Shown here one piece after another: positions 16,790 through 56,402 of a DNA stretch of 64,000 nt. The notes beneath the pieces are model-generated. The model was given only the letters and a program-made list of their open reading frames with translations, was not told the DNA's origin and searched no databases. Origin of the DNA: Gekko japonicus (lineage: Eukaryota); NCBI RefSeq assembly GCF_001447785.1, contig NW_015163130.1, positions 354,814-418,813 of the forward strand. Reading direction: 5' to 3'. Within the stretch, counting starts at the first letter, position 1. The number at the start of each line of letters is the position of its first letter. A program made the translations under genes and the position numbers.

Positions 16790-18103
16790 TCACCAGGCAG
16801 TCTGAGTCCATTGCCTGCAAAGAATCTTCCGGAACGCCTTGCGGAAGTCCTGGTTGAAGATGGTGTATATGACAGGGTTCAAGGAGCTATTACAGTAGCC
16901 AATCCAGAAGAAAAATGTGAAGGTGCTGTCTGGGATCTGACAGTGCTTCTCGGGGCAGATGGCCCTGAGGCTGTAGAGGAAGAAAAAAGGGAACCAACAA
17001 AGGACAAAGACTCCAATCACCACAGCAAGAACAAAAGTAAACCTCTTCTCTCGATTCAGGTGTGTCTTTTTCTTCCAAGGGTTGGTGCTGAGGGCCCTCC
17101 TCACCAGCACAACCTCCCCTTTGGCCGTGGCCAACGTGTCCATACCCTTCGGCGAGCTTTGTGGGGTACCATTGCTCTGCTTCACGCTGTTATGAGGAGA
17201 GCACTCCGGTGGACTGGATCCTGAAAATGGTTTCTTCTCCGGCTGGGGCTCAGAAGGGCTGGAGGCGGTTGCTGACTGTGGGGGCTTTTCCTCCGGGCTC
17301 ACGAGAGAAATCCTTCTCGTAGAGAGAATATGGGTGTCTGGTTGGTCCCCTTCTTGGATAGGTAACTGATGCCCATTGAGTTCCCTTTCTGTCTGTTTCT
17401 GTTTGGGAGATGTTTCACTGGATGGGCCAGTGACAATCTGAGGGAGCCCTTCATTCACTTTTACCTTCGGCTTCTTCGCTCTAGGCCCCTGCCTGCTTCG
17501 ACGCTTGGCTATGAAGTAGATCCTGAGGTACACCAAGATCATAATGACACAGGGCGCAAAAAAGGAACAGGTGCTGGAGGAAATGATATACCATGGCTCC
17601 TCATTCAGTTCACACTTCCTTTCTTCTTCTTTTGCGTTCTTTGGGTTTTCGTTGAGGACCAACGGGGGCAGAGAGATGACGGCGGCAATCAACCACACAA
17701 CAAGAATGGTGCACTTGATTCTCCTCGGAGTCCTCTTCGAATTGTACTCAATGGCCCGGCTGACGGACCAGTAGCGGTCCAGACTGATGGCGCAGAGATG
17801 CACGATGGAAGCGGTACAGAAGAGGACATCCAGCGCCAGGTAGGCCTTGCACCAGGTCCTGCCAAAGTACCAATAGCCCATCAGCTCATTGGCGAGAGAG
17901 AAGGGGATAATGAGGGTCGCCACCAGGATGTCCGCAGCTGCCAGAGATACCAGGAAGAGGTTCTGTGGGGCTCTCAGAGACCTGCTGGTCAGCACCGCGA
18001 TGATTACCAGGATGTTGCCAAAGATGGTGAAGAGAATGAGGAAGGTGATAACAGCGGCGATGGCAGCGGTGGCTTGGACTGTGTAGCCCTCATGGCTACC
18101 CAT
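16790..18103 (-). CDS. ADRA2B: Alpha-2B adrenergic receptor, intronless, 437 aa
   Basis: [30 protein letters not shown]..., LALDVLFCT (D3.32), SLDRY, CWFPFFF, NPVIY, C-terminus [11 protein letters not shown] matches the alpha-2B subtype. ATG at 18103 is in a perfect GCCACCATGG Kozak context; a weaker in-frame ATG lies 5 codons upstream at 18118. Confidence 0.97.
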
Positions 18104-18299
18104 GGTGGCCACAGTCATTGAGGGGAAAAAATGGCCTGACAGGTCCAGAGGGGAGGTGCAGCCCACTTCCTCAGTTCTGCAGGATGCTGAGGGTCCACAG
18201 CTCCGAAGCCCCCATTGGTGCCTGGCCCAGAAGTGCTGTTGGAAGGCCAGAGGGAGAGAGAAGCTGGGGCTCAGTTTCCAGCACCGCTTCCATACTGGG

Positions 18300-18960
18300 A
18301 TCCTGCCAGCAGGAGCATCTGCTCCTTCAGCCGCGCTGGGAAACTGCGCTCTGGCGGCTAGCGAGCGGCTCAATTGCAGCGCCGCTCCCCCCTAGCCATA
18401 GCGGCAATCCACCGCCTCCGCCTCCCTCGCAGCGCTGCCTCTGGCCCCTGGGCTCGCCTTCGCCTTCTCCCACATCCAGGTGGCTCCGGATCAGAGGAGC
18501 ATCACGGGCTGCAAACGGACCGCGAAGTTTCTCCTGCTCTTCCTTTCTGGGAAAGTTGAGAGGCACACGCCGCGCCGGCTCGCGGAGCTCCACACGGCTG
18601 GCTCGCTCTCTCCTGGCTGAGGAAAGACCCAGCCTCCCTGTGCTTTTTGAAATGAACTGCAGAAGAGGAGGCTTGTCCCACCCCCACCCCTCCCCACAAC
18701 ATCTCTGACGCTGATGTCAGGCAGTTTCTCCGGCTCTCACTCTATCCCCTTCTTGGAGGGGAGAAAAGAAGCAAGGAGACAAAAGAAAGGGGTGTGTGGA
18801 GGAGGCAGGGCTGTGCCGGCGCGCACACACAGGCTCGTTCAGCGGTGCCAACCACAAGGGAAGTCACTGGCCTCCTTTCAGGGGGGTCCCCCCTAGGAGG
18901 CAGGCTGCTGCTGATCTGTCTTCTGTCTCACCTCCCTCGCAGGGCCTGGGTGTGTGTTTC
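18300..18960 (-). promoter_or_regulatory. ADRA2B CpG-rich promoter / 5' leader
   Basis: GC- and CpG-rich block directly upstream of the CDS, with CRE-like tgacgc/tgatgtca at 18706-18719. Confidence 0.6.
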
Positions 18961-26050: not shown

Positions 26051-26922
26051 GCACAGCTCCAAGGCACATTGAGGCTACACAAGCCTGCCACTTGCATTTA
26101 GGGACTGAGTCAGATGTATCATTTTGATCTCATCTGCTGGAGCTCACCACACTCATTTTCAGCTTCATCTCTGGGCCTTACTCCAACATCCAAAATGATC
26201 ACTAATGATGGCTGCAGCCTAAAAGCAGCACAGATGTTGTCGACTCACAGAGCTGCAAAATTGCTGGAACTCTTAACACTGACAGAAGATTTGGCTACAG
26301 CACACTTCTGCTGCTGGAAGTCGGCCAGATAAAATAGCAGGGCCAGCCTGCAAGTACCTGCTGGGATAAGAAGATTTTCCTTCTGTTCAAGGCATATGGA
26401 AAGCTGGGGCTGTCAATACAACAGAGGGCTCTGTACTGCCCACAGTCAGATACCCAATCCTTAGCCTGCTACTGTCAATCCACTGCTGCTCATCCTCCTT
26501 CTATGCAACTGAAAGCTGCCAGTCAAGAACCCTCCCAGTTGGCATTTCTCCCCAGGAGGCCCCCCCCCCATTTGATGGGGTTAACAGACTCCAGCACCTT
26601 TCTTCAAGGTTGTTTCTGACAGCCCTGAGAGTCTAATTATCCTGTCTGCCTCTTAGGCAGTTTTCTCCTCTTCCACCCACCTTCAAACCTTATTCCAGTG
26701 ACACCTTTTGAGGCAGAGCCTAGAATTCCTTTCTTTTAGTTCTCGGAGGAACTCTCCTCCTCCTGCCCATCTGTCACAACAGTCCAACCAAAGAGGTCAC
26801 GTAAGGCATCCCCTTTCCTACCAAGATGCCTCCAAGTAGAGACAGGTCATCAACATCAACAATAAGCCCCCATACCCATCCATCTCCCTTCCAGAACACT
26901 TTTGTAATTTCAGCAGCTAGCT

Positions 26923-27038
26923 TTTATTTAGAAATTAGGGGTGGGGTGGGGGGCTGTTTTGTCACCTCTGTCCCAAAAATGTAGTAGAAGCATTCAAGCT
27001 AGTCAGCATACGATGAAAGGGAATGCTTAAAGTTTATT
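26923..27038 (-). terminator. Two candidate ASTL poly(A) signals (AATAAA at 27033-27038 and 26923-26928)
   Basis: tttatt hexamers ~190 and ~300 nt downstream of the ASTL stop. Confidence 0.5.
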
Positions 27039-27223
27039 TTGCTCATTTGTACAAGGATGGCTACAAATAAGGAGGTGGCCAATCCATAATGGAGCGCACG
27101 TTCCTTTCAGGATGCTTCTTTTTGATTTCACCTCCAAGTCCCTGGGATTCAGGTGCCCAGGCTGGCAATTCATCCTCAGGGTCACTGTCATGTGCTTTGC
27201 TATTTTCTCTCTAGCAAAGACTT

Positions 27224-30200
27224 CTAACCAAGCTGATGGCCAGAAGTTGGGTTCTCTACAGGAGAGTGGGTTCTGTGCTCTGGTGCTACTTCCTTCATTT
27301 GGATCATTTCTTCCTGTCTCATTGCAGTGTGGGTCTCTGAGGCTGGCACTGATGCCTCTGCAGAGGGACCAAGTAGCTCCCCATTGCCTACCGCTGAAGG
27401 ACTCCCTTTGATTGGAAGGAGCCCACTGTAGCCATTTCCCCCTTTTAGATCTTGGCTTCCTTGGCTTACATGTGGCCTATGGTACTTCAATTGAATTCTA
27501 ACTTCATTCGGGCTGAGAGTTTGGGGATCCACCAGTGAGACTCCTGTGGTAGCAGTAACTCCTTCAGTGGACTCCATATCTGTCAGATACATACCTTTGG
27601 AACTTATCTCCAAATGAAGGGTTGTCTTGGTCTTCTCGCTGTCAGGAACAGAAAGGGCCATTTCTGTTGTTCTTCCATCACCTGGTATGGGGCTTCCCAT
27701 CATCTCCAAGACTAGTTTTCTGGTGGGACCAACTGAGATGTTCATTGCCTCTTTCTTTCCATTGATAATTGTGGGTTCTTCCATGAAGGAAGGACTGGAG
27801 GGTGCATAACCAGACTGAGAAGCAAGTCTAACAGCTGTATTGGTAGCTGCTATAATACCTGCACCATTCTGTGCAGCCGTCTCTGATCCCAAGTTTAAAT
27901 TCATTGCAGTAGTCATTTCTCCTAATACAAATACTCCACTCTTCCCTTTTTCCAGGAAGGGCTTTGTCTGTCTCCCTTCCACAGTTTTATATGTTGGCCA
28001 GATAGTTTCAGGTTCTAGTGAGAGTTGTGGGATTCCTATCAGTTTTGTCTCAGAGTGTCCTTCATGAAGTCCCAGGGGGAAAGCTCTAGCAGAAGGCATC
28101 CTGTAGATTTCAGTGCTGGCATAAGTCTCCAAGTCAGCTTCCCCACTTTTCTTGGTATCTCTGCTTGTGAGGTCTCTTGCCTCAATTGGTATACTTGCTT
28201 GGATTTCCAAAGTCTGTATAGGAACAGCACTGGTTGAGTATGCCATGGATGCAGTTATGTTACCTCCTGTAGATGGTAGAGTTTCCTTTATAGGGCTGAT
28301 AGTAGAAGGTTCCCCTCTGTAGCTTACAACCTTGGGAGACTTCGGCAAGCCAGGGGTCACAGGCAGAGTCGTCCCTCTAGTGGTAGCATGAGACATTGCT
28401 GCTGACTGCATGTCTAGTAAAGGAGGGACAGTGGCCCTTTGGGCAAAGTCTTTCTCAGCGTCAGCTGTGGCCCATTTCACCCCAAGAAGCATCTCTTCTG
28501 TGGTATTTGCTAAATTAATAGGTTCCTCTTCTGTGAAGGGGCTCATTTCTCTAGGCTTAGAAGCGAATTTATGCAGGAATTGTGGAGATAAACTCTCAGA
28601 ACTCCCTGTAGATTGCATATTCCACAGTAGAGGAGGCTTTGTTTGTTCTTCTGTGTACTTCAAAGTTTGGTTACCAAGAGCCAAAGTGGTAGAAAAACTG
28701 GAAGGACCAATACTGGAAACTCCTGAAGTCCCTTCACTTGTTATTGTGATCTCTGAAATCTCCCTCTTATATGGCATTGTATGCTCCTGCTTACTCACTT
28801 TAAGTATTTCCACAAAATTGCCAAATCCAGTACTCTTGGTCGGGTTTCCAGACCCACTCGACCAGAAGAGGGCAGTTCTGGTTTCATGCATGGGCACAAG
28901 CATCCCTTCCAAGATGGAGCCATGTTCTTTGACTTCTGTTCCGGGACTTGGTTGGCTAGTAGACCCCAGTTTGAACTGTCTGTCTAGGAATGACAATCCC
29001 TTAGTTTTAAGTTCCGTGTTGGAAGATTTTGTTCCAGATGATGAAGCAACCATTTCTTGTCTCGGAGACATTGCTTTCCTTCGCCTGGCTTGTGTATCAC
29101 CATTCTGTGCTCCAGTAATGCCAGCTACTAGCGAGAAGTTAGTATGCGGCTGTGGGGTCTCTGCCCAACCAACCTGGGTGTAGGATGGCATTTGGCTCTT
29201 CTCTGACTCTCTGGTCAATGCTCCCTGCATAGATTCCTTTCCATGGGCCTCAGTTTGTTCAGTTCCAACTGGGATTTGGCTTTCGGTTTCTTCCCCCTGA
29301 CTCACAGTAACCTTTGGTTCTATAGACGTGCTCTGCATGGCTGTAGCAAATACTGTTTCTATGGTTTGGTTTACTTGTGGTCCTTCAGCTTGTACACCTG
29401 TAGTGGATGTAGTCAGTCTTCCAACAAGAGTTCTGAGCCCATATGTTGCAGTGTTACTTGGCTGTCCAAGAATTTGAGACCAAGAAGCCCCTAGCAGAGG
29501 GGTTCTTTCTGTGGGGAGCATGGCCTGGTTGGTTTCCATTGCTAGTGAAGCTGGCTCTGTAAAGGAATGTGAGTTGATTTTAGTTGGAGCTTGGCCAGAT
29601 TGCATTGGCATTTCAGTAGCTTGTACCCATTCAGTCTCGAAGAGAGAGCCTGAAGGTGTAACATTCTCTTCCCACCTACCCTTTCTTGTCAAACTAGCAG
29701 GCGGTAGAGAAGACCACTCCACTTCCATAGAAGGCACTGTAGGACCACTTTGAGAGAGAATGGCCTCCTTCCTTCTTGAAGCAGCAAGATGGCTTGTGAT
29801 CAGGGCCCAAGACGTGGCTGCAGCAGTAGCACCAACCTGGCCAAGGTGATGGTCTTGAACTGAACTTCCAAGGGCTAGAGCTTCCTCAGTATAAGGCATT
29901 TGTTCAAAATCATTTCCTGGAGAACTTCTTCTGGTGTTGGAGTGCTGGGCGTATACTGGTCTACTCTCCTTTGTTCTGTAGGAACTTTCAACTTTGTCTT
30001 CTGCCATTCCACTGAGGATGCCGGTGGTAAAGGATACTTGGCTCCCTGCTTCACTGCTCATGATTGCTTCCACTCCAGCAGCACGTGAAGCAGCAGCTGA
30101 GTTCTCAGAAACTTTTGGAGAGGTTGCTGCATGCACAGAGCTTGTTACTTTAGTCTGAACACCCTCCATCAGGGGCACAGACGTGAAATTGCCAAGTTCA

Positions 30201-31047
30201 TTTCCAGAGCTGCTGACTGATTGCGGGACTAGCTCCTCTGATTGTTTCTCCATCAGAGTAAACACGTATCCCTCAGTTGAGTGCAGAGGGCCATTTACAT
30301 CTTCAGACTCACTGCTCCCCATTACCAGTAGACTTCTTGTCTCTATAGGGGTAGAGGCTTCTGTCACATATTCTGCATGTGTGGCTCTCATGCTAGAAAG
30401 AGGCCAGTACAGAGCTTTCTCACTAGGCCTTGTAGCAGTTCTCTGGACAATTTCATTTAGAAGTGAAGCTGGACTTCTGGTCCCAAAGGAAGTGACATGT
30501 TTCACTTGAGGAGCAGTTCTTGTCATGGCGTCAGTAGTCTTTTGCTGACTTGGTGAGTAGGCCCCTTCAAAGTCTGAGGCCTTGGTTTTTAGCTCTTTTG
30601 CACTACTGGTTAGTTTCTCCAGAGCTTGCCACAGTGTGCTCCTCTGAGCTACCTGAACTTCTGTTTCTGTGGGCTGGGCTTCAGATGGCACTCCCTGAGC
30701 CACCGTTAGGTACTCCATTTTGCTGGCAGCCCCTGGAGGCGGTAGGGTTTGGTCATGCCTCTCTTGGGTCAATGTAGCTGCCAACGGAATTTTTGTTGTT
30801 GGGGTTCCTATTTCATCAGAGCCTTTCCCAGTAGGAGTATTCAACAGCTGGTTAATATCCACTTTGGTTTGGTCTTCTGGCTTCTGAAGAGTCTCTCTAG
30901 CAGGATGGGCCATTTCTGTGGCCTCAGTGATTGATCTAAGACTCTGGGCAGTGGAGAGTTTGATTTGGTTCACAGTTGTGCAGGGCTCTGGTTCATGTGG
31001 AATGAAGTCCTTTATTTTCTCCTGCAGAATTTTCTCTGTTGAAGTTT
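27224..31047 (-). CDS. ASTL: Ovastacin exon 9: giant terminal exon encoding a ~1,270-aa Ser/Thr/Glu-rich tail
   Basis: The 1249-aa ORF 27224-30973 stays open upstream to a phase-1 acceptor (ttcatcttaag|AA at 31047; alternative caacag|AG at 31035) that matches the phase-1 donor of exon 8. Confidence 0.8.
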
Positions 31048-31199
31048 CTTAAGATGAACACAGTAGATTAGAGCATCCCTCACCTTACCCGTATATCCTT
31101 TGTTCCCAGCCATGTGTTAAACTAGCATAATTAGGACTACTTCAGCTTTACTCCCCATGTACAACAATAGAAATGCAAGAATGCAACCAATTGTAGGCA

Positions 31200-31635
31200 T
31201 TCCATCCCAACCTGGTGGAATGAGCTCCCACTAGAGGTCAGGGCCCTGTGAGACCGTTTACAGTTCTGCAAGGCCTGTAAGACAGAGCTCTTCCGCCAGG
31301 CTTTTGGTTGTGGCAGCGGACATCAAGTATCATCTGGCCCCTCCTGCTACCATGCTGTTACCATCTGCTACAATCCATCATGGTCTTCTATTTTTGAGGC
31401 TCAGAATGATAACCCCCCCACCTTAACTGGGGTTGGGTATTTACCATCCAGAATCCCGCATGGGACTTAAGCCTCTCTGTTTTAAATTGACTAACACCGG
31501 GGCATCATAGTAATAGGTGTGTGATAGTCTGATCACCATCATTTAAGGATTTAAGTTTTATAGTTTTAATCTCTGGTTTTATTGTTCTGCCTATTCATGG
31601 GGGGGGGCAGGATAGACATTGAACCAAATAAATAA
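31200..31635 (+). mobile_element. L2-clade LINE 3' end in ASTL intron 8
   Basis: cctggtggaatgagctccc...ggcctgtaagacagagctcttccgccagg...aaataaataaa, same family as 826-2070. Confidence 0.6.
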
Positions 31636-31953
31636 AATTGTACGCTCAGGGAGTCACAACTGTGCTTCCCCTCATCACAAAGTGGCCTCCAACAGCATAC
31701 AGGGGCTTCCAGTAGTTGGCCTCTGAGAAGCTGTTAACTATGAGGTCGAAAGGCCATAAAATACCCCCCCACACACTGCAAAGACATTGGCTTAGCCACA
31801 GCTCCCCAAAACCAAGATTGCTAACTGAACTGCTTTAATCTACTGGAGGTTTTTAACCCATCAAGTCAGAACAGAAGATGCTGTCCTGAACCGATTGCTA
31901 CCCACCCGTCTCCAGAGATGGCAGCCTGTACTGATCTTCTTTCAATTCCTTAC

Positions 31954-32082
31954 CTGGCTGCAGGGCCACCTGAGAACACTTGTAGAGCTTGTTGACTCTG
32001 GCAATATCTGAACTGCTCAAGTTCCACCGCTGACCCAGGAAGGCGTGAGAATTGGAGAGTGGTGTGATGGTAGGCAGGCCAG
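31954..32082 (-). CDS. ASTL: Ovastacin exon 8 (5' end lost in gap 32083-32136)
   Basis: [42 protein letters not shown], donor CAG|GTAAGG. Confidence 0.92.
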
Positions 32083-32450
32083 NNNNNNNNNNNNNNNNNN
32101 NNNNNNNNNNNNNNNNNNNNNNNNNNNNNNNNNNNNATTCTCCATGTCCTGATGACTCTCCTGTAGTTAAGCTATCCTGCATAGGTCCCGATTACCAGCA
32201 GCTCCCTTGCAGTTGTCTTAAGAGAGCTCATGTAACTTTGAAGGGCAGACTGAGTGGCATGCATTTTCCATGACTTGGAGGCCATGTGCATGTATGTTTT
32301 AAGGTGGAGACCTCTTCAGGTGAGTGGGGACAGTATAGTCCAGTGCTAGGGCTTGAGACACAAGAGAACTCTGCCCTTGCAAGAGCAACATCTCCGTTAA
32401 CATGGAATGTCTCTTCAACAATACAGAAACTTTTTTTTAGTAGCTGGGTG

Positions 32451-32656
32451 CAATGTTCCCTCTAAACTATGGAGTCTTGTGAGCAAAAATTCTAGTGTGT
32501 GAGCTACTGGCATTAAAGTTGTGAGTAAGCGATTTGGATACTGCATAAATTAGTTTGCTTTGGAGCCATCCTTCCTGAGCTGAGACTAAAATATGTGAGC
32601 TGGAGGCTAAAAAGCTGTGAGCTGGCTCATACTAACTCAGCTTAGAGGGAACACTG
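32451..32656. mobile_element. ~205-bp hAT MITE (CAGTGTTCCCTCTAAG TIR) with 8-bp TSD
   Basis: caatgttccctctaa...cttagagggaacactg flanked by gctgggtg on both sides. Confidence 0.9.
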
Positions 32657-33062
32657 GCTGGGTGGATGGAAACTTTCCACAACCCCCTCCATCAAAAAAA
32701 AAGTTTAGGTAAAGTTTTATAGAGTTTGGGGGCTTATATAAAACATTTTGATCCCATCGTTCTTCCAAGGAGCTCATATATTTTTTCCTCCTTTCCCCAT
32801 TTTATCCTCACAACCTTAGGATCACAGAGTCAGAAGGGATCTCCAAGATTATCTAGTCCAACCGCCTGCACATTTCAGGAAATTCACAAATACCTCCCCC
32901 CCCCATACCTTGTGGGGTAAATTAGGCTGGCAGCCAGCAGAGGGCTGGGCTAAAATCACCAAGGAAGGCTTATGGCTTTAGGGGGTCTTGAACCCCGGTC
33001 TCCCAGCTCCCGCCCAGCACTCTAACCACTTTACTACTCTGGTCTTATACAGGCTTCCTTAC

Positions 33063-33144
33063 CTGCCATAATGCATGACAGATGAGTAGTCATAGTCTAC
33101 TAGCATGTTGGTGTTCCAAGACTTCATGAAGTTGATTTCAAAGC
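33063..33144 (-). CDS. ASTL: Ovastacin exon 7 (Met-turn)
   Basis: [27 protein letters not shown](R); acceptor cttccag|, donor |gtaagg; 82 nt. Confidence 0.95.
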
Positions 33145-33524
33145 CTGGAAGACAAGGAAATTATGTACAGTGATGTGATCTTCATGGCCCTAACGTGGCA
33201 ATAATTAATGGAGTTCCAGTTGGTCTCCAAGCTGGGGCTTTGCTCTGAACAGCAGCCCTGTACTAGGACAGAGCAGCACCCAAATAGCCTTTTGCCTCAA
33301 CTAAGAGGCATCTTGGGGAGCTGTTCCCCTACAATGGAGGGTTACGGGTGCCAAGGAGAGAGAGGAGGTAGACACCTTTAAGCCTGTGCATGTGAACAGA
33401 GGGGAGCCTACAGACCATGCAAACGTGCACACAAACGACAGCCTGACTCAAAGCAAAAATCTCTTCCATTTGGTGCTTCACATTATTAAAAGTGGTTCAC
33501 CAATACATTTGCACTAATGTATTT

Positions 33525-33856
33525 AGCTGTGGTGGCTCAAGTGGTTAAGACGCTGAACTGCAGGCTGTGGAAGGTTGGTAGTTCAGCAGTTCGAGACCTG
33601 AGTTGCCACATGACGGAGTGAGCTCCTGTCTCTAGTTCCAGCTCCTGCCAACCTAGCAGTTCGAAAGCAAGAAATTGCAAGTAGATAAATAGGTACCACT
33701 TTGGTGGGAAGGTAACAGCGTTCCGTGCACCTTGGTGTTTAGTCATGCCAGCCACATGACCACGGAAATGTCTTCGGCTTTGAAACGGAGATGAGCACCG
33801 CAACCCTAGAGTCGGACTCGACTGGCTTTCGAGCAAGGGAACCTTTACTTTATTTA
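33525..33856 (+). mobile_element. Sauria SINE (Squam1)
   Basis: tRNA-like head gtggctcaagtggttaag, body cctgccaacctagcagttcgaaagc...gtagataaataggtacc, Bov-B-like end and acctttac tail. Confidence 0.9.
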
Positions 33857-34228
33857 CACTAACAGCTTCAGTCTTTTCTCCCCTGGGAAATATAGTTTTG
33901 AAGAGAGGACTGTTTTTTGCATCCTTGCATTATAATTGCCAGTACTGTATCAGAAGCCAGTTATGTATATGGAGGACCATATACATTTGTAGCACGTAAA
34001 GATGTCCTACAGTTGAATTGTTTCAAACAGGTGTTTTATCAAATCTGATAGGGGATCAACAGCAAAGAAAGCATGTCTAGACCATGGAAATCACATCCCC
34101 ATCATATGATTCCACTCTGAGAACTGCTTCTTCCAAGAGACAAGCTCAAGTTCTGCCACCCAAGTTCTCAGCCTTATTCCAATGAAACAATGTCCCTTGC
34201 GCAGTGGAAGAACTGAAGCAGTACTTGC

Positions 34229-34410
34229 CTGTCAAGATATCATTCCAGGAGATGCTGATATACTTGTCTCTGTCTGCTCTAGAGTGCTCATGCCAGAAGC
34301 CCAAGATGTGCATGAACTCATGCAGAGCCACTCCCTTCCCCCTCCTGAGGCAAGCAGGAGCCAACGACACCACCTGCATCCCACCAATGCGGCCAACATT
34401 GGAGAAGCAG
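34229..34410 (-). CDS. ASTL: Ovastacin exon 6 (zinc-binding motif)
   Basis: [60 protein letters not shown]; HExxHxxGxxH intact; donor is AG|GCAAGT (GC-AG intron). Confidence 0.95.
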
Positions 34411-34742
34411 CTGGGGAGAGAGGCACAGAGAGGCTAAGGGAGAGACCGGGAAAGGCAGAAGTTGCATTGCTATGAAATGACCATCCAGCCCTCTGACCAA
34501 ATTGTAGGGAGCCTTAATGTAGTCTGTTTCCATTTCTGTGAACATTTCAGTTGGTTCAACGGAGAAGTGAAGCTAATGCAATGCTCTTGTAAATGCTACT
34601 GCAAGTCAGCTGTAAATTTCCAGAAGCCAGCCACCATTGAGGAGTCATTGGATGCCAAGTAGCAATTGGTAGCCATTGGAATTTGCTATTGGGGTGGCAG
34701 TCTGCTTTGGCTCCAATGTTGCATAGCCCCTCTGCATGACTA

Positions 34743-34760
34743 AGCCCTCTAGTGGCGGCA
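34743..34760 (-). promoter_or_regulatory. Candidate CTCF site in ASTL intron 5
   Basis: Minus strand TGCCGCCACTAGAGGGCT. Confidence 0.45.
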
Positions 34761-34936
34761 CAATGCTGCAGAAAGAGCCCTGCAGGATCAAGTGTGTGTG
34801 TGTGTGTGTGTGTATGATCCCAAAGACTACAGGGGATGAATCTATCCAAATACCCCCCCCAGCTGTCTCTGTAGGCACTCCTCCCCCCCCTACACCTCAA
34901 AAGTGAGCCTCATTCTCTCCCCTGGTCACTACTAAC

Positions 34937-35054
34937 CCAGAGAGAGGAACGATGGAGATGAAGTCCCTCTGATAGGAATACGGGATGAAATTGATGCAGG
35001 TGAACTTGGCAAAGTCTTCGAAGGCTTCCTGGATTATCCTTGCACTGGGTTTAT
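34937..35054 (-). CDS. ASTL: Ovastacin exon 5
   Basis: DKPSARIIQEAFEDFAKFTCINFIPYSYQRDFISIVPLSG; acceptor cttcag|, donor |gttagt; 118 nt. Confidence 0.95.
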
Positions 35055-36072
35055 CTGAAGAGGTAACCAAAACAAGGTTAGCAGCAATGGAGCTGCAGTC
35101 CTGGCTGTATCCATTTTCCCAAAAGATAATCAGTAAGCTGGATTTGCTACTCGTTTTCTCCTTTATTTGCCAGACCCAACACATTCTATGTAGGCCTGTA
35201 GCGCTGTCTTTACATACATCATTACATCCACGGGTAGCACATCTCTGTGACCCTCCACTGTAAGATCTAAGGAATCAATGCCACATTCTAATGACAGGCT
35301 GCCAGTTTAATACAAACTTGTCATTGTGCAACAGAAATAGATTTGTGACCAGATGTCAGGCGTGATCCCAGAACTGGTAGGAGAGAGACTCATGTGGAGC
35401 AAAGAGCTCATTCTTGATGGCTATACTTGTTTGCCAAGTCCTCTAGTTTACCAGAGCTAGAAGCTTGACTCCCCCTTTAAAGAAACATGATAATCCCTAG
35501 GAATTTATCTTCTTCTCTTCCTACCCTATTGCATCGAAGCACTGATCCTGTACAGAGTTTACCCATCATACATTGTAATCCCGTGTGTGTTTATTCTGAA
35601 GTTAAACCCCCACAGTGTTCAGTGGGGCTTGCAGCCTGGTAAACAGGCACAGGAGTGCAGCTGTTGTGAGTCAGACTTGCACCAACTCTTATGGTGCCTC
35701 TACCCAGCTCTATGCAATTACTCCCTCCAGCTTCTAAATGTCATCACCAATGCCTGAAGGCAGGGAGTGGAACCTAGCCATGGCGGATGGGGAAAGCAAT
35801 TCATGAAAAGCAAGTCTGTAGGTTCAGCACTTGCATTTTGTGATGCTTTCATTTATTTACATAAGGTGAAACATGTTGGCAACACACACACACACCACTC
35901 TGGATGCACAGGAATTGGCGAGTCTTCCTCCAGTACCCCTTCGTTTAGATTCTGGTTCAACCCAGAAAGTAGAAGCAGAACCCTACTTGCTGTTTGTCAC
36001 AGCATGTCTTCCTTTACCCCCCCCCCACTGCCCCACATTCCTAAAGAGAACTTTCAAGAGACTGTTCCTCAC

Positions 36073-36163
36073 CATATTTGTGAGAGATAACATAAGGAAT
36101 CTGGACAATCCCACCCTTCTTTGGCCATCTTGGGTTGGCAGATGAAAATAGCCGGAACGGACG
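36073..36163 (-). CDS. ASTL: Ovastacin exon 4 (start of catalytic domain)
   Basis: RPFRLFSSANPRWPKKGGIVQIPYVISHKY; acceptor cctctag|, donor |gtgagg; 91 nt. Confidence 0.93.
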
Positions 36164-36542
36164 CTAGAGGAGCAAGAGAACAGACATCAGTTTGAGTTCC
36201 ACCATCCACAACATTCAAGGGATTTCTGCAAGAATGTTTCTGGAGTGTAAGAAATCCAGTGTACTGGTTTCCCCAAGTAGAGATTGGAAAAACCCCACTA
36301 CTCAGGCCATGATGGTGCTAACCAAGATGACTTGGTCTGGCTGATAAAGAACAAGTTCGGGTCAGCCAAGCTTTACTTCCTCCCAGCCAAGCTGTCCCCC
36401 TTAAAGTTTTTTGGAGGAATCACTCAAATTGAGCCAGGCCCATCCCCCCCTTACACACACACACACGTCTTCCTCATTGCCTCCTGATCTTCTACACCTC
36501 CAGTGGTCACTTCAGACCCCTGGGCAATGCTTTCCATGGGCA

Positions 36543-36761
36543 TAGGGTTGCCAGGTCTGGATTGGAAAATACCTGGAGACTTTGGGGATGGATCCAGGAG
36601 AGGGCGGGGTTTGGGGAGGGGAGGGGCCTCAGCATGGTACAATGCCATAAAGTCCACTCTTTAAAGGAGCCATTTTCTCCAGGGGAGCTGATCTCTGCCA
36701 GATGGAAATCAGTTGTAAAAGTGGGAGATCTCCAGGCCCGACCTGGGAGCTGGCAACCCTA
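36543..36761. mobile_element. TAGGGTTGCC-family hAT MITE with exact 8-bp TSD
   Basis: tagggttgcca...tggcaacccta flanked by catgggca on both sides. Confidence 0.9.
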
Positions 36762-37328
36762 CATGGGCAGCACTTTTGAGTACTCAACTGGAGTAAATAA
36801 GCATTAAATTTTAAGTGCAAGGATAGAGCAACCCAACAGGCAACTACAGGCACTAGAAGTCCAGGAACTCCAGGCCAATCAGAAAATCCCAATCAGGAAA
36901 TCCTTGTGTATCCTCTCCCCAACAGAAAATCCCAAAATATCCCCCCTACCAGGATAGAGCTGCTTGGGTCAACAGAGTCCAAGAGGCAGATGTAGCCCCC
37001 CCCCCACTCCCTGGTTCCCTCCTTTGGTCATTTGCATGTACAGAGCTGGGGAAAGGAACTGCAGTCAGGCACAAGAGCGAAGGCATCATCCCTCTCCTGC
37101 CCCAGACCTTACTCCCAAAGGTCTTACATTGCACTCATTCATTTCTGCCTCGCCCACCCCCTTCCCTTTCTGGCAATCAGTTGTATGAAATGTGTTGACA
37201 AGAGGCTGAGGTCAGCAAAGCTCCTGCCCACCCCCTTCATGTGCAGCAGAATCAAGATCCACTTTAGGGTACCAAACAACATCAGCCAGCCACAAGAAAC
37301 GCCCCTCCGCAATTCAGTTTTTACTCAC

Positions 37329-37390
37329 TGCCTTGATGATGTCCCCTTCAATCAGGAAGCTGCTTTCTGGTGCCTCCAGAGGGATCAGCG
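37329..37390 (-). CDS. ASTL: Ovastacin exon 3 (propeptide with Asp-switch motif)
   Basis: ALIPLEAPESSFLIEGDIIKA; acceptor tttccag|, donor |gtgagt; 62 nt. Confidence 0.95.
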
Positions 37391-38149
37391 CTGGAAAGAG
37401 AGAAATGGAGGTCATCATTTGATGCTTACCACAATGCAAGTTCATAGATTCAACTGCCACATGCTCATGTCACTGGGGTTGAGAACTGAATTTGCTGTCT
37501 GCAAACATTAATTTTGGCTCATGCAGTTTTGGTGCCGAAATCCTGAATGCAGCATTGACACCAGTGTTGAAGCCCTAAGACGTGTGGACAGCATCTGAGC
37601 AGGCTTCGCCACCGCCAGCTACCACTGCGTGCCAGACACCAAACAGCATCAACAGGGCATCAAATAGCTACTTAATACTTGACTAGTTTTCATGCCTTCA
37701 GAGAAAACTGACACCAAGTATAGAGGAATGATTGTTTGGAGTTTGACAAAAAAGCACCCCAGATGTTCCAGGACTTTAATAACTTCTCCAGTTTCTTTTT
37801 AGACCCTTTGATTTATGTGGAGGAATGGTGTGTGTGTGGGGGGGAGACACACAGAGGCCAATGAGGCTTCCAGCTTCCCAGGGTCTCTGTCTTTCCCCCC
37901 AGCCCCTGGGATTTTAAACATACTCAAAGGCGTGTTGGTAAACCTTAGTGAGATGTCAGGAACCAGTTGCTTGCTAAGGTTGCCAGGCCTGGCTGAGGGT
38001 TTAACGCCCTTCATTACTCTTCCAGTGGGCAGCAGAGTAGAACCAGACTAAGCTGTGAAGCGGTTACTATTTTATAGAGTTGCTTAAAATCTGCGCGCAA
38101 TTGCCGTACATATCCAGGACATAGACTCTAGCTGGGGGCAATTACTTAC

Positions 38150-38257
38150 CTTGGTTAATGTCAAGAATGTCATCTTGGGAACTACTGGCCTCTGGCAAAT
38201 TGTTTTCCTGGTTGTCCTCCTCTTGGAATGCATCTTCATGGCCATTCACAAGCAGGG
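38150..38257 (-). CDS. ASTL: Ovastacin exon 2
   Basis: ALLVNGHEDAFQEEDNQENNLPEASSSQDDILDINQ; acceptor ttttctcag|, donor |gtaagt; 108 nt, phase 1-1. Confidence 0.85.
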
Positions 38258-39821
38258 CTGAGAAAAGCAATTTTGGGGGTAGCAGCTTCAGCCCAACTGC
38301 AAACTCCCACATGTCCATGGCTATCCCAAGGAACATCTCCACCCACCCGCCAAGGAGCTCAGGCAGACATACAAACTTCCTCTACATTTTATCCTCACTG
38401 TCACTCTCTGAAGTAGGCAAGAATGAGGGTGTGGCAGGCCCCCCAAGATCATTTAGTGGGCTTTGCGCAGATCTGAACCTGGGTCTCCCAAGGGTTAACT
38501 AACACACCACACCAACTCACACAGCTACACTCCTCTTTTTCTGAACACTGTCACTCTCTAGCTCATGACCACAGTTTGAAGAAGGGATTCTAGTTCTTAG
38601 GTGACTCTCAGGCTAGCCTACCTCACAGGACTGTTGTGAGGATAAAATAGAGGAGAAGAGAATGATGTAAGCCACCTTGGTTCCCCATTGGGGAGAAAAG
38701 TAAGGTATAAATGACATTAACAAAAGAAAAGCTAGCTCTATTTTTTTATTGTGGACAGGACTTCAGCTTCTCTCACAAGTCCCTTCAGTGAGCTGCCTCC
38801 GTGGAAGACAAACATCCCCAAACTTTCAGGACAGCTAAAGTGGTCACTGGCCCAAAATAAAATATAGCAGGATTTTTAACGTAGTAGAGCTGGGAGGGAA
38901 GTGTGAACCAACATTTGGAGGTAGAATTGAGACCTTCAATGTGCTATTTACTCCCCCCCCCCAACACAGGTTATTTCAAATTAGAGTCGTGCCCCCCTCC
39001 CCCCAAAAAAGCACATCCACTGCTACAACAGAAACAAATGGAGGAAAATATTATACAGGAAAAGTCTGTTTCTTTCATTCTTCTAATGCTGTACACCAGC
39101 AGTGCCAGTTTCCTTTATAATAAATATGAGATTTCACCACAAAGCCGGGTGCTTGCATAAAATAACTCTCATCCAATTAGACAAGGAAATGTTAGCAATG
39201 CCACAAATTACTTCTTTTACTTTTAAGAAAAAAATCAAAGTACATCATTTCAGTGATCCCAACAATGGGATTACAGTCAGGTGGCGGGGGGGGGGGGAGT
39301 GTGAGGGGAGCCTTGCCAAACAGACTGTTTGGGGAGACAGGCAAGCATTCATGCTCATGGAGGCCAAAGCAGGAAAACCACACAACAGCAGCTTGCTTGA
39401 GACACTTCATAACAGCTACTACAGGATTAACTATCAAGGGCTCCAGATGAGGCACGGAGATCCCCCAGAATTACACCTGATCTCCAGACCACAGAGATGA
39501 GATTCCCCAGAGAAAGTGGCTAATTTAGAGAGTGGACTCTGTGGCTTTATACCTCACAGAGGTCCCTCCCCTCCCCAAACCCCACTCTTCAGAAATTCCC
39601 CAACCTGGAGATGGCAACCATAGTCAAGGAAGCCTCCTCTGCCAGGCTCAAATCCAGACAGAACCCTCTCACGTTTCAAAGCCGAGTTTACCATCCTTTA
39701 ATGGTACCCAAAATGTGCCACACAGTAGGGCCAGCCTTGAGGGCAGCCAACTCTTTCCTGTGACTAGAAAACATCACCTACAGACACCCCCACAACAGGG
39801 CCAGAGAGAAAAGTCCTTTAC

Positions 39822-39879
39822 CTGGCCAAAGCCAGAAAACCCCCCAAAATACAAGCCAGTAGCCAAAGGGCACTCCCAT
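39822..39879 (-). CDS. ASTL: Ovastacin exon 1 (signal peptide)
   Basis: GCCATGG start, MGVPFGYWLVFWGVFWLWP, donor CAG|GTAAAG, phase 1 compatible with exon 2. Confidence 0.85.
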
Positions 39880-40049: not shown

Positions 40050-40406
40050 GAAGAGGCCTTTTCATTAGGGATACAGTTTAACCCTTTGTGTGAAACAGGC
40101 CTCTCTAACTAGTCCAGTATTTTCGAGGGAGGCTGGCCTGATGCTTTAGGGTAGGTTGCAGACAGGGAATTAGTGTGATGGCTTTGTGTGTTGTTTGCCC
40201 TTGGCATTCCAGAGGTAACCACTCCTGCCTCCGAATGTGGAAGTCCTGTTCAGCTAACCAGTAACAGCCTTGGACATGTCTAATCCCTTTAAAAAGCCAT
40301 TTACGGCTAGGGACCATTGCTACATCCTCTGGCAATGAATCTCTCATGCCCTGAGGCTTGGGAGCAGGGCCAGGAAAGAAAAAAGGGACAAGCACCACTC
40401 GGCAGT

Positions 40407-40894: not shown

Positions 40895-41328
40895 GTGATA
40901 CAAGAAATGTTTCCAGTTGGGATTGCCATCTCATCAGACAGCCATCACGGCTGTGTCTAGCAACAACCTGGTGGGCAGGGATGAGGATCTGATCATTTAC
41001 TGGATGCTGATGTATGTCCACCATGCTTCTAACAAAGACACAAGAGCAGGCCAGGCCACTGTTTTCAGGTCTGTTGGCAAAACTTCTTGCATGAAAGTGT
41101 CTTTTGCATCCTGACACAACATTTATAAGGGACTTAGCAGCAGAACCTGTTTTTAATGCAAGAGAACTGGCCTGGGACATATGTATTAATAATGATTCCT
41201 GTGCACATTCCAAGTAACAAAGAGAGATTTATATGAAGATTGCCTTGAATCCAAAGATATGTCTTGGTAGAAATTTGGCTCACCATGCAGAAGATTTCTT
41301 CAACCCTAAAAGAAGGGAAAATAGTGTG

Positions 41329-52504: not shown

Positions 52505-52719
52505 CTAATGGCACAGCACCTCCGTCTCAAACTGCAAAAGCTGCCCCATGAAGCCAAAATTGGGTGAGATGACCCCACGGCGCTGCTTGACGAAGTCGAA
52601 GGCTTCCTCCAGGCGCACCCGGCGGCTCTGGATCAAGTAGGCAAGGCAGATGGTGGCGGAGCGGGAGATGCCAGCTTGGCAGTGGACCAGCACTCGCCCA
52701 CCACTGTTTTTGACTGAAT
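52505..52719 (-). CDS. DUSP2: Dual specificity phosphatase 2, exon 4 (catalytic loop)
   Basis: DSVKNSGGRVLVHCQAGISRSATICLAYLI...ISPNFGFMGQLLQFETEVLCH*; acceptor ttcctgtag|. Confidence 0.97.
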
Positions 52720-53651
52720 CTACAGGAAAAAGAAAGAAAGAACAGTTACTTTATGTCTCCAAGAGCAGAGGCTCAACTGCCAGCAGCAACCATAGACTGG
52801 AACATACCCTAGACATTTCTATTGCCTTTCAAAGATATGATACATGGCAGGGAAGTGTTTATGGGTTTAGTGGACCCATTTAGCACTCCTCATCCCAACA
52901 GGTGCTGATCATACAGGAACTGTGGGGCATCAGACCCCTTCTTGTGCCACATTTACCCCTCAGGAAGGACATCCCACATCTGGACCAGACTATGCTATCT
53001 AGCACAACATTTTGTTTTGAGCAGCCAGGTGTCCGTAAGAAAGTCTCCAGCTAGATAAGTAGGCAGTCACTTCTTTGATTGCACCCAAAGATATACTGCT
53101 TCTGTATATGAAGGTTCCATTTAGTTATCACAGCTAACTGCTGTCAAGTCATATCCTCCATAAATTGCCCTCATCCCTTTTAAAGGAACACTATGTCGTC
53201 TAGGAGCATGGGAATCCCAAAAGCAGTCGCTAACCAAATGACTTTGTGTAAAGTTTCAGCCCACAAAGTAGTGTCAAGTGGTACAGCAGTAAGGTACTGA
53301 GTTGATCCATCTACATAGTGTCTTGTTTAAGAATATATATTTGGGTTTCTTGACATATCAAATGTCACAGCATTAACAATATTTGGATTTTATATTGAGT
53401 ATCTGCTACAGAAATCAGCAAGATTTCTAAGTTTTGCAAGCTCTTTTCTACCACTGAAAGATATAACATGAAACGGATATGAATAACTGTCCTATCACAC
53501 TTTTACATCTAATGGGTGGCAAAATAATACCTGGCAGGATGATGCAAGTGCTCTTGACGCCCTGCTAGAATGGTCTGGTTGTCTACATTGGCTCATAAAG
53601 GCCTTATGCTCCTTTACAACCTAAAAAGGCTGGCAGAAAACAAGCACCTAC

Positions 53652-56382: not shown

Positions 56383-56402
56383 AGAGGAGAGCATCTTTTT
56401 AC

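What the first reader, a model, noticed from the sequence alone, without database searches (positions are those of the whole stretch)
27224..39879. Giant ovastacin: intact astacin protease fused to a ~1,270-aa mucin-like tail from a single 3.8-kb exon
Seen: eight phase-compatible exons give a signal peptide, propeptide (FLIEGDI), [18 protein letters not shown] and the four catalytic-domain cysteines. The exon 8 donor is phase 1 and matches acceptors leading into an uninterrupted ~1,270-codon frame. That frame is S/T/E/P/A/G-rich and not tandemly repetitive. It has about eight N-X-S/T sequons, several basic clusters (RKGR, RRRK, RRK), no transmembrane segment, and no cysteine in the 1249-aa ORF. 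Known: mammalian ovastacin is ~430 aa with a short disordered tail and cleaves ZP2 after fertilisation. Inference: a ~1,550-aa secreted protease-mucin hybrid. The tail could be a heavily O-glycosylated spacer, tether or egg-coat component in a lineage with physiological polyspermy. An open frame this long with no stops or Cys argues for selection. I cannot tell whether it is already annotated in other reptiles.
Basis: partly seen in the sequence, partly recalled or inferred. Interest (0 to 1): 0.85.

Follow-up and report, generated by a model that had tools for sequence, protein, structure and literature searches.

The report
Gecko ovastacin gene with giant disordered tail
This is a gecko's copy of the egg protease gene ovastacin (ASTL), whose last exon adds a roughly 1,270-residue floppy tail; the gene model is right, but the same long form is already annotated in other geckos and in most non-placental land vertebrates, so it is the normal state and not a new hybrid.

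Summary
On the minus strand, nine phase-compatible exons (ATG 39879 to TAG 27224) encode a signal peptide, a propeptide (FLIEGDI), a complete-looking astacin catalytic domain and a 1,274-codon terminal exon. The exon 8 to exon 9 junction (31954/31047) gives the same residues as the junction in the NCBI ASTL models of two geckos (1,571 and 1,561 aa; tail 72-76% identical).

The assembly gap at 32083-32136 hides the acceptor and about 17 bases of exon 8. Continuity there cannot be verified, and I did not fill it.

The tail has no Pfam or PDB match and no tandem repeats. It has one Cys, S+T of 23%, and AlphaFold pLDDT of 28 with no secondary structure. It is disordered and only moderately mucin-like. 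The frame is kept open in at least 17 squamate sequences, whereas neutral drift to the same divergence predicts about 14 stops.

It is not a reptile novelty. ASTL models of 870-2,744 aa exist in frogs, turtles, alligator, marsupials and echidna. Most of them end in a MAM domain preceded by a conserved KRSL motif. In this gecko a TAG replaces the Lys of that motif, and no MAM sequence is detectable downstream. The proposed link to polyspermy is not supported. Interest is modest.

The parts
39822..39879 (-). Exon 1: ATG at 39879 and a hydrophobic N-terminus (presumed signal peptide). Donor CCAG|GTAAAG, phase 1.
   Evidence: tblastn to gecko ASTL models P0001 and P0003; splice context. The signal peptide is inferred from hydrophobicity only.
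38150..38257 (-). Exon 2: N-terminal part of the propeptide. Phase 1 in, phase 1 out.
   Evidence: 83% identical to P0001 residues 20-55; acceptor cag|CC and donor CAAG|GTAAGT.
37329..37390 (-). Exon 3: propeptide with FLIEGDI (astacin aspartate-switch motif). Ends in phase 0.
   Evidence: 95% identical to P0001 residues 56-76; splice sites.
36073..36163 (-). Exon 4: end of the propeptide and start of the catalytic domain (RPFRLF...ISHKY). Phase 1 out.
   Evidence: 100% identical over 24 residues to three gecko models; splice sites.
34937..35054 (-). Exon 5: catalytic domain with the first conserved Cys (FTCINF). Donor GG|GTTAGT, phase 2.
   Evidence: Pfam Astacin profile positions 14-56; 92.5% identical to P0001.
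34229..34410 (-). Exon 6: zinc-binding motif [18 protein letters not shown] and two Cys. Non-canonical GC donor (CAG|GCAAGT), phase 1.
   Evidence: Pfam Astacin E 1.2e-22; PDB astacins 3lqb and 1ast at 4e-15 to 6e-13; donor read directly.
33063..33144 (-). Exon 7: Met-turn SVMHY. Donor AG|GTAAGG, phase 2.
   Evidence: Pfam Astacin profile positions 127-144; 97% identical to P0001.
32083..32136 (.). Assembly gap (54 N, length only estimated). It hides the 3' end of intron 7, the acceptor and about 17 bases of exon 8.
   Evidence: Left unfilled.
31954..32082 (-). Exon 8, visible part: end of the catalytic domain (GLPTITPL...KLYKC, fourth Cys). Donor CCAG|GTAAGG, phase 1.
   Evidence: Pfam Astacin profile positions 154-189, E 1.4e-5; 98% identical to P0001.
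27224..31047 (-). Exon 9: a 1,273-codon disordered, acidic, S/T-rich tail plus the TAG stop (27226-27224). Conserved start motif (KDFIPHEPEPC) with the single Cys.
27209..27229 (-). Relic of the conserved tetrapod motif [V/I/L]-x-K-R-S-L-x-[E/D]. It reads G-stop-K-S-L-L-E: the gecko stop sits on the Lys codon.
   Evidence: tblastn alignments of Rhineura, Podarcis and Phrynosoma run through the stop to 27209; motif survey.
27160..27192 (-). Frame-shifted relic just after the stop. It matches the C-terminal extension (HDSDPEDELP) of another gecko's longer ORF (P0004).
   Evidence: tblastn, 91% identical over 11 residues, in a different frame from the tail.
26923..27038 (-). Two AATAAA polyadenylation-like signals, 185 and 295 bases after the stop.
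   Evidence: Pattern scan. Their use is not tested.
16790..18373 (-). Synteny anchor: single-exon alpha-2B adrenergic receptor gene (ADRA2B).
   Evidence: Pfam 7tm_1 E 1e-72; best PDB match is the alpha-2B receptor 6k41, E 7e-152.
52508..52750 (-). Synteny anchor: DUSP2 catalytic exon (VHCQAGISRS). A rhodanese-like exon lies at 56383-57030.
   Evidence: Best PDB match is DUSP2 1m3g, E 3e-39; rhodanese-like hit.

Best explanation
This is the gekkonid orthologue of ASTL (ovastacin), lying between ADRA2B and DUSP2. It has nine exons, the number reported for mouse. Exons 1-8 encode a secreted zymogen with a standard astacin catalytic domain. Exon 9 (3.8 kb) is translated in continuity with them. 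It adds about 1,274 residues of fast-evolving, acidic (net charge about -31), S/T-rich chain that is predicted to be disordered.

This long C-terminal region is the usual form of the gene in non-eutherian tetrapods. There it ends in a conserved K-R-S-L motif followed by a MAM domain. In this gecko and its gekkonid relatives a stop codon sits exactly on the Lys of that motif. The protein therefore ends where the relatives' dibasic site lies, and the MAM part is gone.

Shown here: the gene structure, the catalytic motifs, the junction, cross-species retention of the open frame, predicted disorder, the absence of a membrane span and of MAM, and the position of the stop.

Inferred: secretion; activation by removal of the propeptide; cleavage of egg-coat ZP2-like substrates, by homology with mouse ovastacin; the tail acting as a long, probably O-glycosylated, flexible spacer or retention arm that is constrained in length and composition more than in sequence; and K-R-S-L being a proteolytic processing site.

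The confidence of 0.8 applies to gene identity, exon model and translated giant tail. For the proposed roles of the tail and of the K-R-S-L motif I would put it at about 0.4.
For: Gene identity:
- Pfam Astacin matches exon by exon and PDB astacin matches.
- Flanking genes ADRA2B and DUSP2.

Junction:
- NCBI gecko models P0001 and P0003, and the UniProt model P0005, read ...QVALQP-E-TSTE..., the same as window donor 31954 plus acceptor 31047.
- Conservation runs right up to the acceptor, upstream of any Met in the exon. The first 30 tail residues are the most conserved block against non-gecko squamates (0.39). The exon therefore cannot be translated on its own.

Tail homology:
- 76%, 72% and 63% identity to three gecko models.
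- Rhineura 34% identity, E 5e-105; Pogona E 3e-52.
- phmmer over 1.84 billion representatives finds only 10 proteins: 9 squamate ASTL or tail sequences plus one weak tick hit.

Constraint and disorder:
- Neutral simulation gives 14 stops at 77% identity and 0 of 200 open frames.
- Mean pLDDT 28.3, no helices and only isolated single-residue strand calls over 1,200 residues. No Pfam or PDB match.

Long form elsewhere and MAM:
-.
- The KRSL motif is present in frogs, turtles and all non-gecko squamates examined; the window reads G-stop-K-S-L-L-E.
- No MAM match in the window above noise.
Against: - No transcript evidence could be examined. The junction rests on conservation and on gene models made by others.
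- The gap at 32083-32136 hides the start of exon 8, so a lesion there cannot be excluded.
- The AlphaFold alignment had only 18 sequences, and low pLDDT is indirect evidence of disorder. A charge-hydropathy estimate from the numbers is borderline.
About 24% amino-acid divergence between gekkonid genera may be close to neutral at the residue level.
- A second gap (24290-24349) lies between the stop and ADRA2B and could hide sequence.
- The tail of Crotalus tigris is annotated as a separate 'mucin-22-like' protein.
- Function, glycosylation and cleavage at KRSL are all untested.
Confidence: 0.8

Rival explanations
1. The dominant transcript ends in a short alternative terminal exon or reads into intron 8, giving a mammal-sized enzyme. 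The giant exon would then be used only in a minor isoform.
For: NCBI lists several isoforms (X1, X2, X3) for ASTL in turtles, Rhineura, Zootoca and alligator. No RNA evidence was available here.
Against: The frame of 1,274 codons is maintained across geckos and other squamates. The exon's most conserved block abuts the acceptor. Both argue that the exon is regularly translated through this junction.
Confidence: 0.1
2. The 3.8-kb ORF is a separate single-exon mucin-like gene that merely sits downstream of a short ASTL.
For: Crotalus tigris models call the homologous sequence 'mucin-22-like', separate from an astacin. Logan ORF calls P0002 and P0004 stand alone.
Against: The first Met of the frame lies about 45 residues into it and is followed by no signal peptide. 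Conservation, including the motif KDFIPHEPEPC, lies upstream of that Met and reaches the acceptor AG. More than 20 independent models in other species join it to the astacin domain. P0002 and P0004 are ORF calls that simply start at the first available start codon.
Confidence: 0.04
3. The gene is a pseudogene in this species, with a lesion hidden in the assembly gap, or the tail is drifting neutrally.
For: The gap hides about 17 bases of exon 8 plus the acceptor. Tail identity between geckos is only 63-78%.
Against: All visible exons are open, 92-100% identical to gecko orthologues in the catalytic part, and have usable splice sites. A neutral tail would carry about 14 stops at this divergence. 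GC content differs by codon position: 0.52, 0.50 and 0.40.
Confidence: 0.03

Closest known systems
NCBI/RefSeq models 'astacin-like metalloendopeptidase' of the geckos Heteronotia binoei (1,571 aa) and Paroedura picta (1,561 aa), and the UniProt Sphaerodactylus townsendi model (1,674 aa)
   Same: Same exon 8 to exon 9 junction. Same tail, 76%, 72% and 63% identical over about 1,274 residues. Same single Cys near the tail start. No MAM domain. The two gekkonid models end at the same position as the window.
   Different: A different species, with about a quarter of the tail residues changed. The Sphaerodactylus model carries a probably spurious N-terminal extension and a different last 17 residues.
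Long-form ASTL of other tetrapods (Pogona, Rhineura, Podarcis, snakes, Mauremys, alligator, tammar wallaby, echidna, Xenopus, Spea)
   Same: Astacin domain 48-85% identical. A long, nearly Cys-free, S/T-rich linker of 730-2,380 aa. A conserved motif at the linker start in amniotes.
   Different: These proteins continue past a conserved K-R-S-L motif into a C-terminal MAM domain (PF00629). The window has a stop on the Lys of that motif and no detectable MAM.
Mouse and human ovastacin (ASTL, 435 and 431 aa)
   Same: Nine exons. Signal peptide, propeptide and astacin catalytic domain, followed by a disordered C-terminal region of unknown origin (PMC12281054, PMC9848320). Same genomic neighbours.
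   Different: The eutherian C-terminal region is about 150 aa, against about 1,274 here. I made no direct sequence comparison with eutherian proteins.
Meprins (astacin plus MAM)
   Same: The relatives of this gene combine an astacin domain with a MAM domain, as meprins do (PMC9848320).
   Different: In meprins the MAM domain follows the catalytic domain directly, and TRAF, EGF and transmembrane parts follow it. In ASTL relatives the MAM domain lies about 1,000 or more disordered residues away, with no membrane span. This gecko has no MAM at all.

Membership tests
Astacin family (MEROPS M12A, Pfam PF01400) | Extended zinc-binding motif HExxHxxGFxHExxRxDRD | tested here: met
   [19 protein letters not shown] in exon 6.
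Astacin family (MEROPS M12A, Pfam PF01400) | Met-turn SxMHY | tested here: met
   SVMHY in exon 7.
Astacin family (MEROPS M12A, Pfam PF01400) | Four conserved catalytic-domain cysteines | tested here: met
   One Cys in exon 5 (FTCINF), two in exon 6 (CFSNVGR and APACL) and one in exon 8 (KLYKC).
Astacin family (MEROPS M12A, Pfam PF01400) | Uninterrupted catalytic domain | tested here: inconclusive
   Pfam profile positions 145-153 fall in the assembly gap 32083-32136. Not filled.
Astacin family (MEROPS M12A, Pfam PF01400) | Signal peptide and propeptide with an aspartate switch | tested here: met
   FLIEGDI in exon 3 and a hydrophobic N-terminus in exon 1. No signal-peptide predictor was run, so secretion is inferred.
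ASTL / ovastacin orthologue | Conserved position between ADRA2B and DUSP2 | tested here: met
   16793-18373(-) best matches the alpha-2B receptor. 52508-52750(-) best matches DUSP2.
ASTL / ovastacin orthologue | Closest relatives are proteins named ASTL; nine-exon structure | tested here: met
   Nine exons in mouse according to PMC12281054.
ASTL / ovastacin orthologue | Oocyte or cortical-granule expression and ZP2 cleavage | not testable with these tools
   No expression or biochemical data were available. In chick, a gene called ASTL marks the embryonic marginal zone (PMC9270967), so expression may differ in sauropsids.
Long-form tetrapod ASTL (astacin, linker, KRSL, MAM) | Linker of more than 700 aa, disordered and nearly Cys-free | tested here: met
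   1,274 aa, one Cys, pLDDT 28.
Long-form tetrapod ASTL (astacin, linker, KRSL, MAM) | Conserved K-R-S-L motif near the end of the linker | tested here: not met
   The window reads G-stop-K-S-L-L-E at 27229-27209. Another gecko ORF reads G-E-K-S-L-L-E.
Long-form tetrapod ASTL (astacin, linker, KRSL, MAM) | C-terminal MAM domain (PF00629) | tested here: not met
   There is no significant MAM match anywhere in the window. The best is 20484-20606, E 0.28 with my own HMM, and Pfam MAM does not match it. The gap at 24290-24349 is a caveat.
Mucin (PTS-domain glycoprotein) | Very high Ser/Thr/Pro content, usually in tandem repeats | tested here: not met
   S+T 23.4% and S+T+P 30.5%. In 50-residue windows S+T is 14-34%. 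No tandem repeats.
Mucin (PTS-domain glycoprotein) | Dense O-glycosylation | not testable with these tools
   No glycosylation predictor or data were available.

The most novel reading that the evidence does not exclude
The ancestral tetrapod ovastacin was a large three-part protein: an astacin protease, then a disordered arm of about 1,000-2,000 residues, then a dibasic K-R-S-L processing site and a MAM domain. The about 150-residue eutherian C-terminal region, whose origin a 2025 review calls unknown, would be the stump of that arm. Gekkonid lizards would have independently discarded the MAM module through a nonsense mutation placed exactly on the processing site, so that the genome now encodes what used to be the cleaved product. 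As far as the searched literature shows, nobody has described this architecture.
Probability: 0.45. Interest if true: 0.55.

Novelty: already known. Interest (0 to 1): 0.3.

Why it matters
As a scan finding it is ordinary: an orthologue of gene models already in RefSeq.

Its comparative context has some value for reproductive biology. Reviews of ovastacin treat the enzyme as about 430 aa, with a short disordered C-terminal region of unknown function and unknown phylogenetic origin (PMC12281054, PMC9848320). The database models collected here suggest that this region is the remnant of a much longer arm that ends in a MAM domain in frogs, sauropsids, marsupials and monotremes.

Geckos offer a natural MAM-less variant. 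That makes the role of the arm, of the KRSL motif and of the MAM domain testable by comparison. It also removes the supposed link between the long tail and physiological polyspermy.

Tried and rejected
I therefore had no orthologous DNA and computed no dN/dS or codon-level tests. I substituted a neutral-drift simulation on the window's own exon.

2. MAM relic hunt.
- tblastn with the C-terminal 300-330 residues of 9-14 MAM-bearing relatives, my own MAM HMM on all stop-free pieces, and a squamate post-KRSL HMM on the six-frame translation.
- The top hit of the MAM HMM, 20484-20606(-), contains ...SLCGWEEE at E 0.28 and looked tempting. Pfam MAM does not match it.
- A genomic ORF from a non-gecko squamate (P0039) shows that the MAM start lies in the same exon as the tail. 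A relic 6.7 kb away is therefore not expected, and I treat this hit as chance.
- A weak Podarcis-only similarity at 26777-26890 (E 1.4) is also not significant.

3. I briefly noted an alternative in-frame GT donor after exon 6. Reading the DNA showed this was my misreading, and it is corrected in the notebook.

4. Pfam and PDB searches of the tail found nothing. Rfam on 18000-41000 found nothing.

5. The antisense ORF 28410-29183(+) has no family match and I take it as a by-product of the sense frame.

6. Literature searches for a description of long ASTL or of ASTL with MAM found none. One search was polluted because 'mam' also matches 'mammalian'.

I did not build, fold or search the joined spliced protein.

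8. I left the third homologous-protein search unused, so birds and ASTL forms of 300-860 aa were not surveyed.

Full report
**What is in the sequence**

The finding lies on the minus strand. The ORF 27224..30973 (1249 aa) is real. The frame is open from 31048 to 27227, which is 1274 codons. The other two frames of that strand carry 69 and 72 stops, and 300 shuffles of the 3.8 kb never gave an open frame longer than 177 codons. The frame is not a chance product.

Upstream, stop-free pieces of the minus strand contain all parts of an astacin zymogen. Pfam PF01400 matches them exon by exon:
- exon 5: profile positions 14-56;
- exon 6: positions 56-116, E 1.2e-22;
- exon 7: positions 127-144;
- exon 8: positions 154-189.

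Exon 6 alone matches crystal structures of astacins and a fish hatching enzyme.

**Exon model**

I derived the model from tblastn of gecko orthologues and from reading the splice sites.

| Exon | Coordinates (minus strand) | Phase and notes |
|---|---|---|
| E1 | 39879-39822 | starts at the ATG; phase 1 out |
| E2 | 38257-38150 | phase 1 in, phase 1 out |
| E3 | 37390-37329 | phase 1 in, phase 0 out |
| E4 | 36163-36073 | phase 1 out |
| E5 | 35054-34937 | phase 2 out |
| E6 | 34410-34229 | phase 1 out; GC donor |
| E7 | 33144-33063 | phase 2 out |
| E8 | (gap)...32082-31954 | phase 1 out |
| E9 | 31047-27224 | includes the TAG stop |

Every split codon that can be read gives the residue found in the gecko orthologues (A, A, D, G, G, E). 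The total is about 1,556 codons if about 17 bases of exon 8 are hidden in the gap. 

**The assembly gap**

The 54 N at 32083-32136 lie exactly where intron 7 ends and exon 8 begins.
- After the gap the sequence is already coding: two bases completing a codon, then GLPTITPL.
- Before the gap the sequence has no similarity to astacins.
- Pfam profile positions 145-153 are missing, and orthologues have six residues at this place.

The nominal length is enough for an acceptor plus about 17 exon bases. However, neither continuity nor frame across the gap can be verified from this window. I did not fill it. 'Intact protease' is therefore likely but not shown.

**The junction into the giant exon**

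The donor CCAG|GTAAGG at 31954 (phase 1) and the acceptor cttaag|AA at 31047 give ...QVALQP-E-TSTEKILQEK... This is residue for residue the junction in the NCBI models of ASTL from Heteronotia binoei (P0001, 1,571 aa) and Paroedura picta (P0003, 1,561 aa), and in a UniProt model from Sphaerodactylus townsendi (P0005).

There is also evidence that does not depend on those models.
- The first 30 tail residues, which lie upstream of the first Met of the exon, are the block best conserved against non-gecko squamates (0.39 identity, against a mean of 0.26).
- They contain a motif (M/K-D-F-I-P-x-E-P-x-P-C) shared with turtles and, more weakly, with marsupials.

A sequence conserved up to an acceptor AG, with no start codon and no signal peptide of its own, must be read through from exon 8. 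I could not examine transcripts.

**The tail**

Its composition is S 11.9%, T 11.5%, E 9.1%, A 8.0%, P 7.1%. S+T is 23.4%. The net charge is about -31.

Other features:
- one Cys, at residue 22;
- eight N-X-S/T sequons;
- basic clusters RRK, RRRK and RK;
- no R-x-K/R-R site;
- best 19-residue hydropathy 1.09, so no membrane span;
- no tandem repeats;
- no Pfam family and no PDB relative.

AlphaFold2 with an 18-sequence squamate alignment gave mean pLDDT 28.3 and pTM 0.19. Over 1,200 residues there were no helices and only isolated single-residue strand calls. That is the signature of intrinsic disorder, with the caveat of a shallow alignment.

'Mucin-like' is a fair nickname for the composition, and NCBI names the Crotalus tigris counterpart 'mucin-22-like'. 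But the S/T/P content is well below classical mucin domains, there are no repeats, and glycosylation is untested.

**Is the tail under selection?**

The tail is 76-78%, 72-75% and 63-66% identical to three gecko models, and 69-79% identical to two further gecko-like ORFs from raw assemblies, with only 1-8% gaps. It aligns end to end with ASTL of other squamates (Rhineura 34% identity, E 5e-105; Pogona E 3e-52).

An exhaustive phmmer search of 1.84 billion representative proteins found only 10 matches. Nine are squamate ASTL or tail sequences and one is a weak tick hit.

I simulated neutral substitution on the window's own exon. At 77% amino-acid identity it gives 14 stops on average and no open frame in 200 runs. 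At 66% identity it gives 22 stops. Keeping about 1,270 codons open in at least 17 sequences is therefore selected.

Conservation is flat along the tail, and the catalytic domain is 92-100% identical between the same species. The constraint seems to act on openness, length and composition more than on sequence.

**It is not a reptile peculiarity**

I searched the astacin part of the gecko model among proteins of 864-2,749 aa. This returned ASTL models from:
- agamid, lacertid, amphisbaenian, scincid, iguanian and cordylid lizards and snakes (1,412-1,854 aa);
- turtles (1,195-2,744 aa);
- Chinese alligator (1,545 aa);
- tammar wallaby (1,877 aa) and Tasmanian devil (1,578 aa);
- echidna (1,305 aa);
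- four frogs (873-1,100 aa).

The linker between the astacin domain and the C-terminus is 730-2,380 residues long, with 17-27% S+T and few Cys. Most of these proteins end in a MAM domain (PF00629), which I confirmed in Pogona, Podarcis, alligator, wallaby, echidna and Spea.

The long tail is therefore the general non-eutherian state. It includes anuran frogs, which are generally monospermic (my knowledge), and marsupials. Orthology of the non-squamate models rests on NCBI's names and on 48-81% identity of the catalytic domain. I did not check their synteny.

**What is special about the gecko**

A short motif, [V/I/L]-x-K-R-S-L-x-[E/D], sits about 90-170 residues before the MAM domain. It is present in Xenopus, Spea, Pseudophryne, two turtles and every non-gecko squamate examined. 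Variants occur in Rana (KRSS), alligator (RRGL) and echidna (RRAL). A four-residue match of this kind is expected by chance about 0.03 times per protein, so its recurrence at one relative position is real conservation inside an otherwise fluid sequence.

Alignments of Rhineura, Podarcis and Phrynosoma to the window run through the gecko stop to 27209. The window reads G-stop-K-S-L-L-E, so the TAG replaces the Lys codon.
- The two gekkonid models and one assembly ORF end at the same place.
- Another gecko-like ORF (P0004) has Glu there (G-E-K-S-L-L-E-K) and stops 25 codons later.
- The window still carries a recognisable copy of that extension, but frame-shifted, at 27192-27160.
- Downstream, all frames are full of stops.

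None of my searches found MAM-coding sequence between the stop and ADRA2B. The best candidate (20484-20606, E 0.28) is not matched by Pfam's MAM model. It is also in the wrong place: a genomic ORF of a non-gecko squamate (P0039) shows that the MAM start is encoded in the same exon as the tail. The 60-N gap at 24290-24349 is a residual caveat.

My inference is that K-R-S-L is a dibasic processing site that separates the protease-plus-arm from the MAM module. Gekkonids would then have fixed a truncation at exactly that point. This is an inference only.

**Identity of the locus**

The single-exon GPCR at 16790-18373(-) best matches the alpha-2B adrenergic receptor (E 7e-152). The phosphatase exon at 52508-52750(-) best matches DUSP2 (E 3e-39).

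The source is a gekkonid lizard, judging by protein identities. It is not human.

**How it most likely works**

- Shown: a gene encoding a hydrophobic N-terminus, a propeptide with the aspartate-switch motif, a full set of astacin catalytic motifs, and a disordered acidic tail of about 1,274 residues with no anchor.
- Inferred from the family (PMC12281054, PMC9848320): secretion as a zymogen, activation by loss of the propeptide, and cleavage of egg-coat ZP2-type substrates with acidic residues after the scissile bond.
- Inferred from anatomy: the tail acts as a long, probably glycosylated spacer or retention arm that may be cleaved off, as the mouse C-terminal region is.

In chick, a gene called ASTL marks the embryonic marginal zone (PMC9270967). 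Expression in sauropsids should therefore not be assumed to be restricted to oocytes.

**Novelty**

I found no paper that describes it. A 2025 review states that the origin of the ovastacin C-terminal region is unknown (PMC12281054). The comparative picture is a modest, testable contribution: a long arm with KRSL and MAM as the ancestral state, the eutherian region as a stump, and geckos as a natural MAM-less form.

Noticed in passing
34227-34228 (minus strand), donor of exon 6: Intron 6 appears to be a GC-AG intron (CAG|GCAAGT). No GT donor nearby keeps the frame with exon 7 or matches the orthologues (ILTG|FEINF).
   Followed up: partly
31035 vs 31047 (minus strand): A second AG lies 12 bases inside exon 9 (caacag|AG). 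It would be an in-frame alternative acceptor removing four residues (TSTE). The gecko models use the 31047 site.
   Followed up: no
20484-20606 (minus strand): A short stretch (...TFNNSLCGWEEE...) resembles the start of a MAM domain. It was the top hit of my own MAM HMM in the whole window (E 0.28), and two weak tblastn hits fall on the same spot. Pfam MAM does not match it and the location is not the one expected, so it is probably chance.
   Followed up: yes
26777-26890 (minus strand): Weak similarity (E 1.4) to the Podarcis MAM start region (...GMP.xTS..G.L), at roughly the distance after the stop where a relic would be expected. A squamate profile does not support it.
   Followed up: partly
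40222-40326 and 41199-41356 (minus strand): The N-terminal extension of the UniProt Sphaerodactylus ASTL model (P0005) matches these upstream stretches, which carry a stop in the window. That extension is probably a gene-model artefact and not coding sequence.
   Followed up: no
28410-29183 (plus strand): A 257-aa antisense ORF lies inside the tail exon. It has no meaningful family match, and I take it as a by-product of the sense frame's composition.
   Followed up: partly
P0040, P0045, P0046 (Crotalus tigris): The rattlesnake counterpart of the tail is annotated as separate 'mucin-22-like' and 'uncharacterized' proteins, while other snakes have one long ASTL model. This is an annotation inconsistency worth flagging.
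   Followed up: no
P0039 and P0043 (unnamed assembly ORFs), C-terminus: A non-gecko squamate ORF keeps KRSL, but its MAM start looks degraded: both Cys of C-x-F-E...L-C-x-W are replaced, and the ORF ends 28 residues after D-W-M-L-D-K-E. MAM loss may have happened more than once in squamates.
   Followed up: no
16790-18373 (minus strand): The ADRA2B ORF as listed starts at a TTG and is 527 aa. Similarity to solved receptors begins only near residue 96, so the true start is probably an internal ATG.
   Followed up: no
12843-12865, 14838-14876, 24290-24349, 42106-42289: Four further assembly gaps in the window. The one at 24290-24349 lies between the ASTL stop and ADRA2B and limits the claim that no MAM exon exists there.
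   Followed up: no
about 34650-34900 (minus strand), intron 5: A dinucleotide microsatellite shows up as H-T-H-T-H-T in two reading frames of the translation.
   Followed up: no
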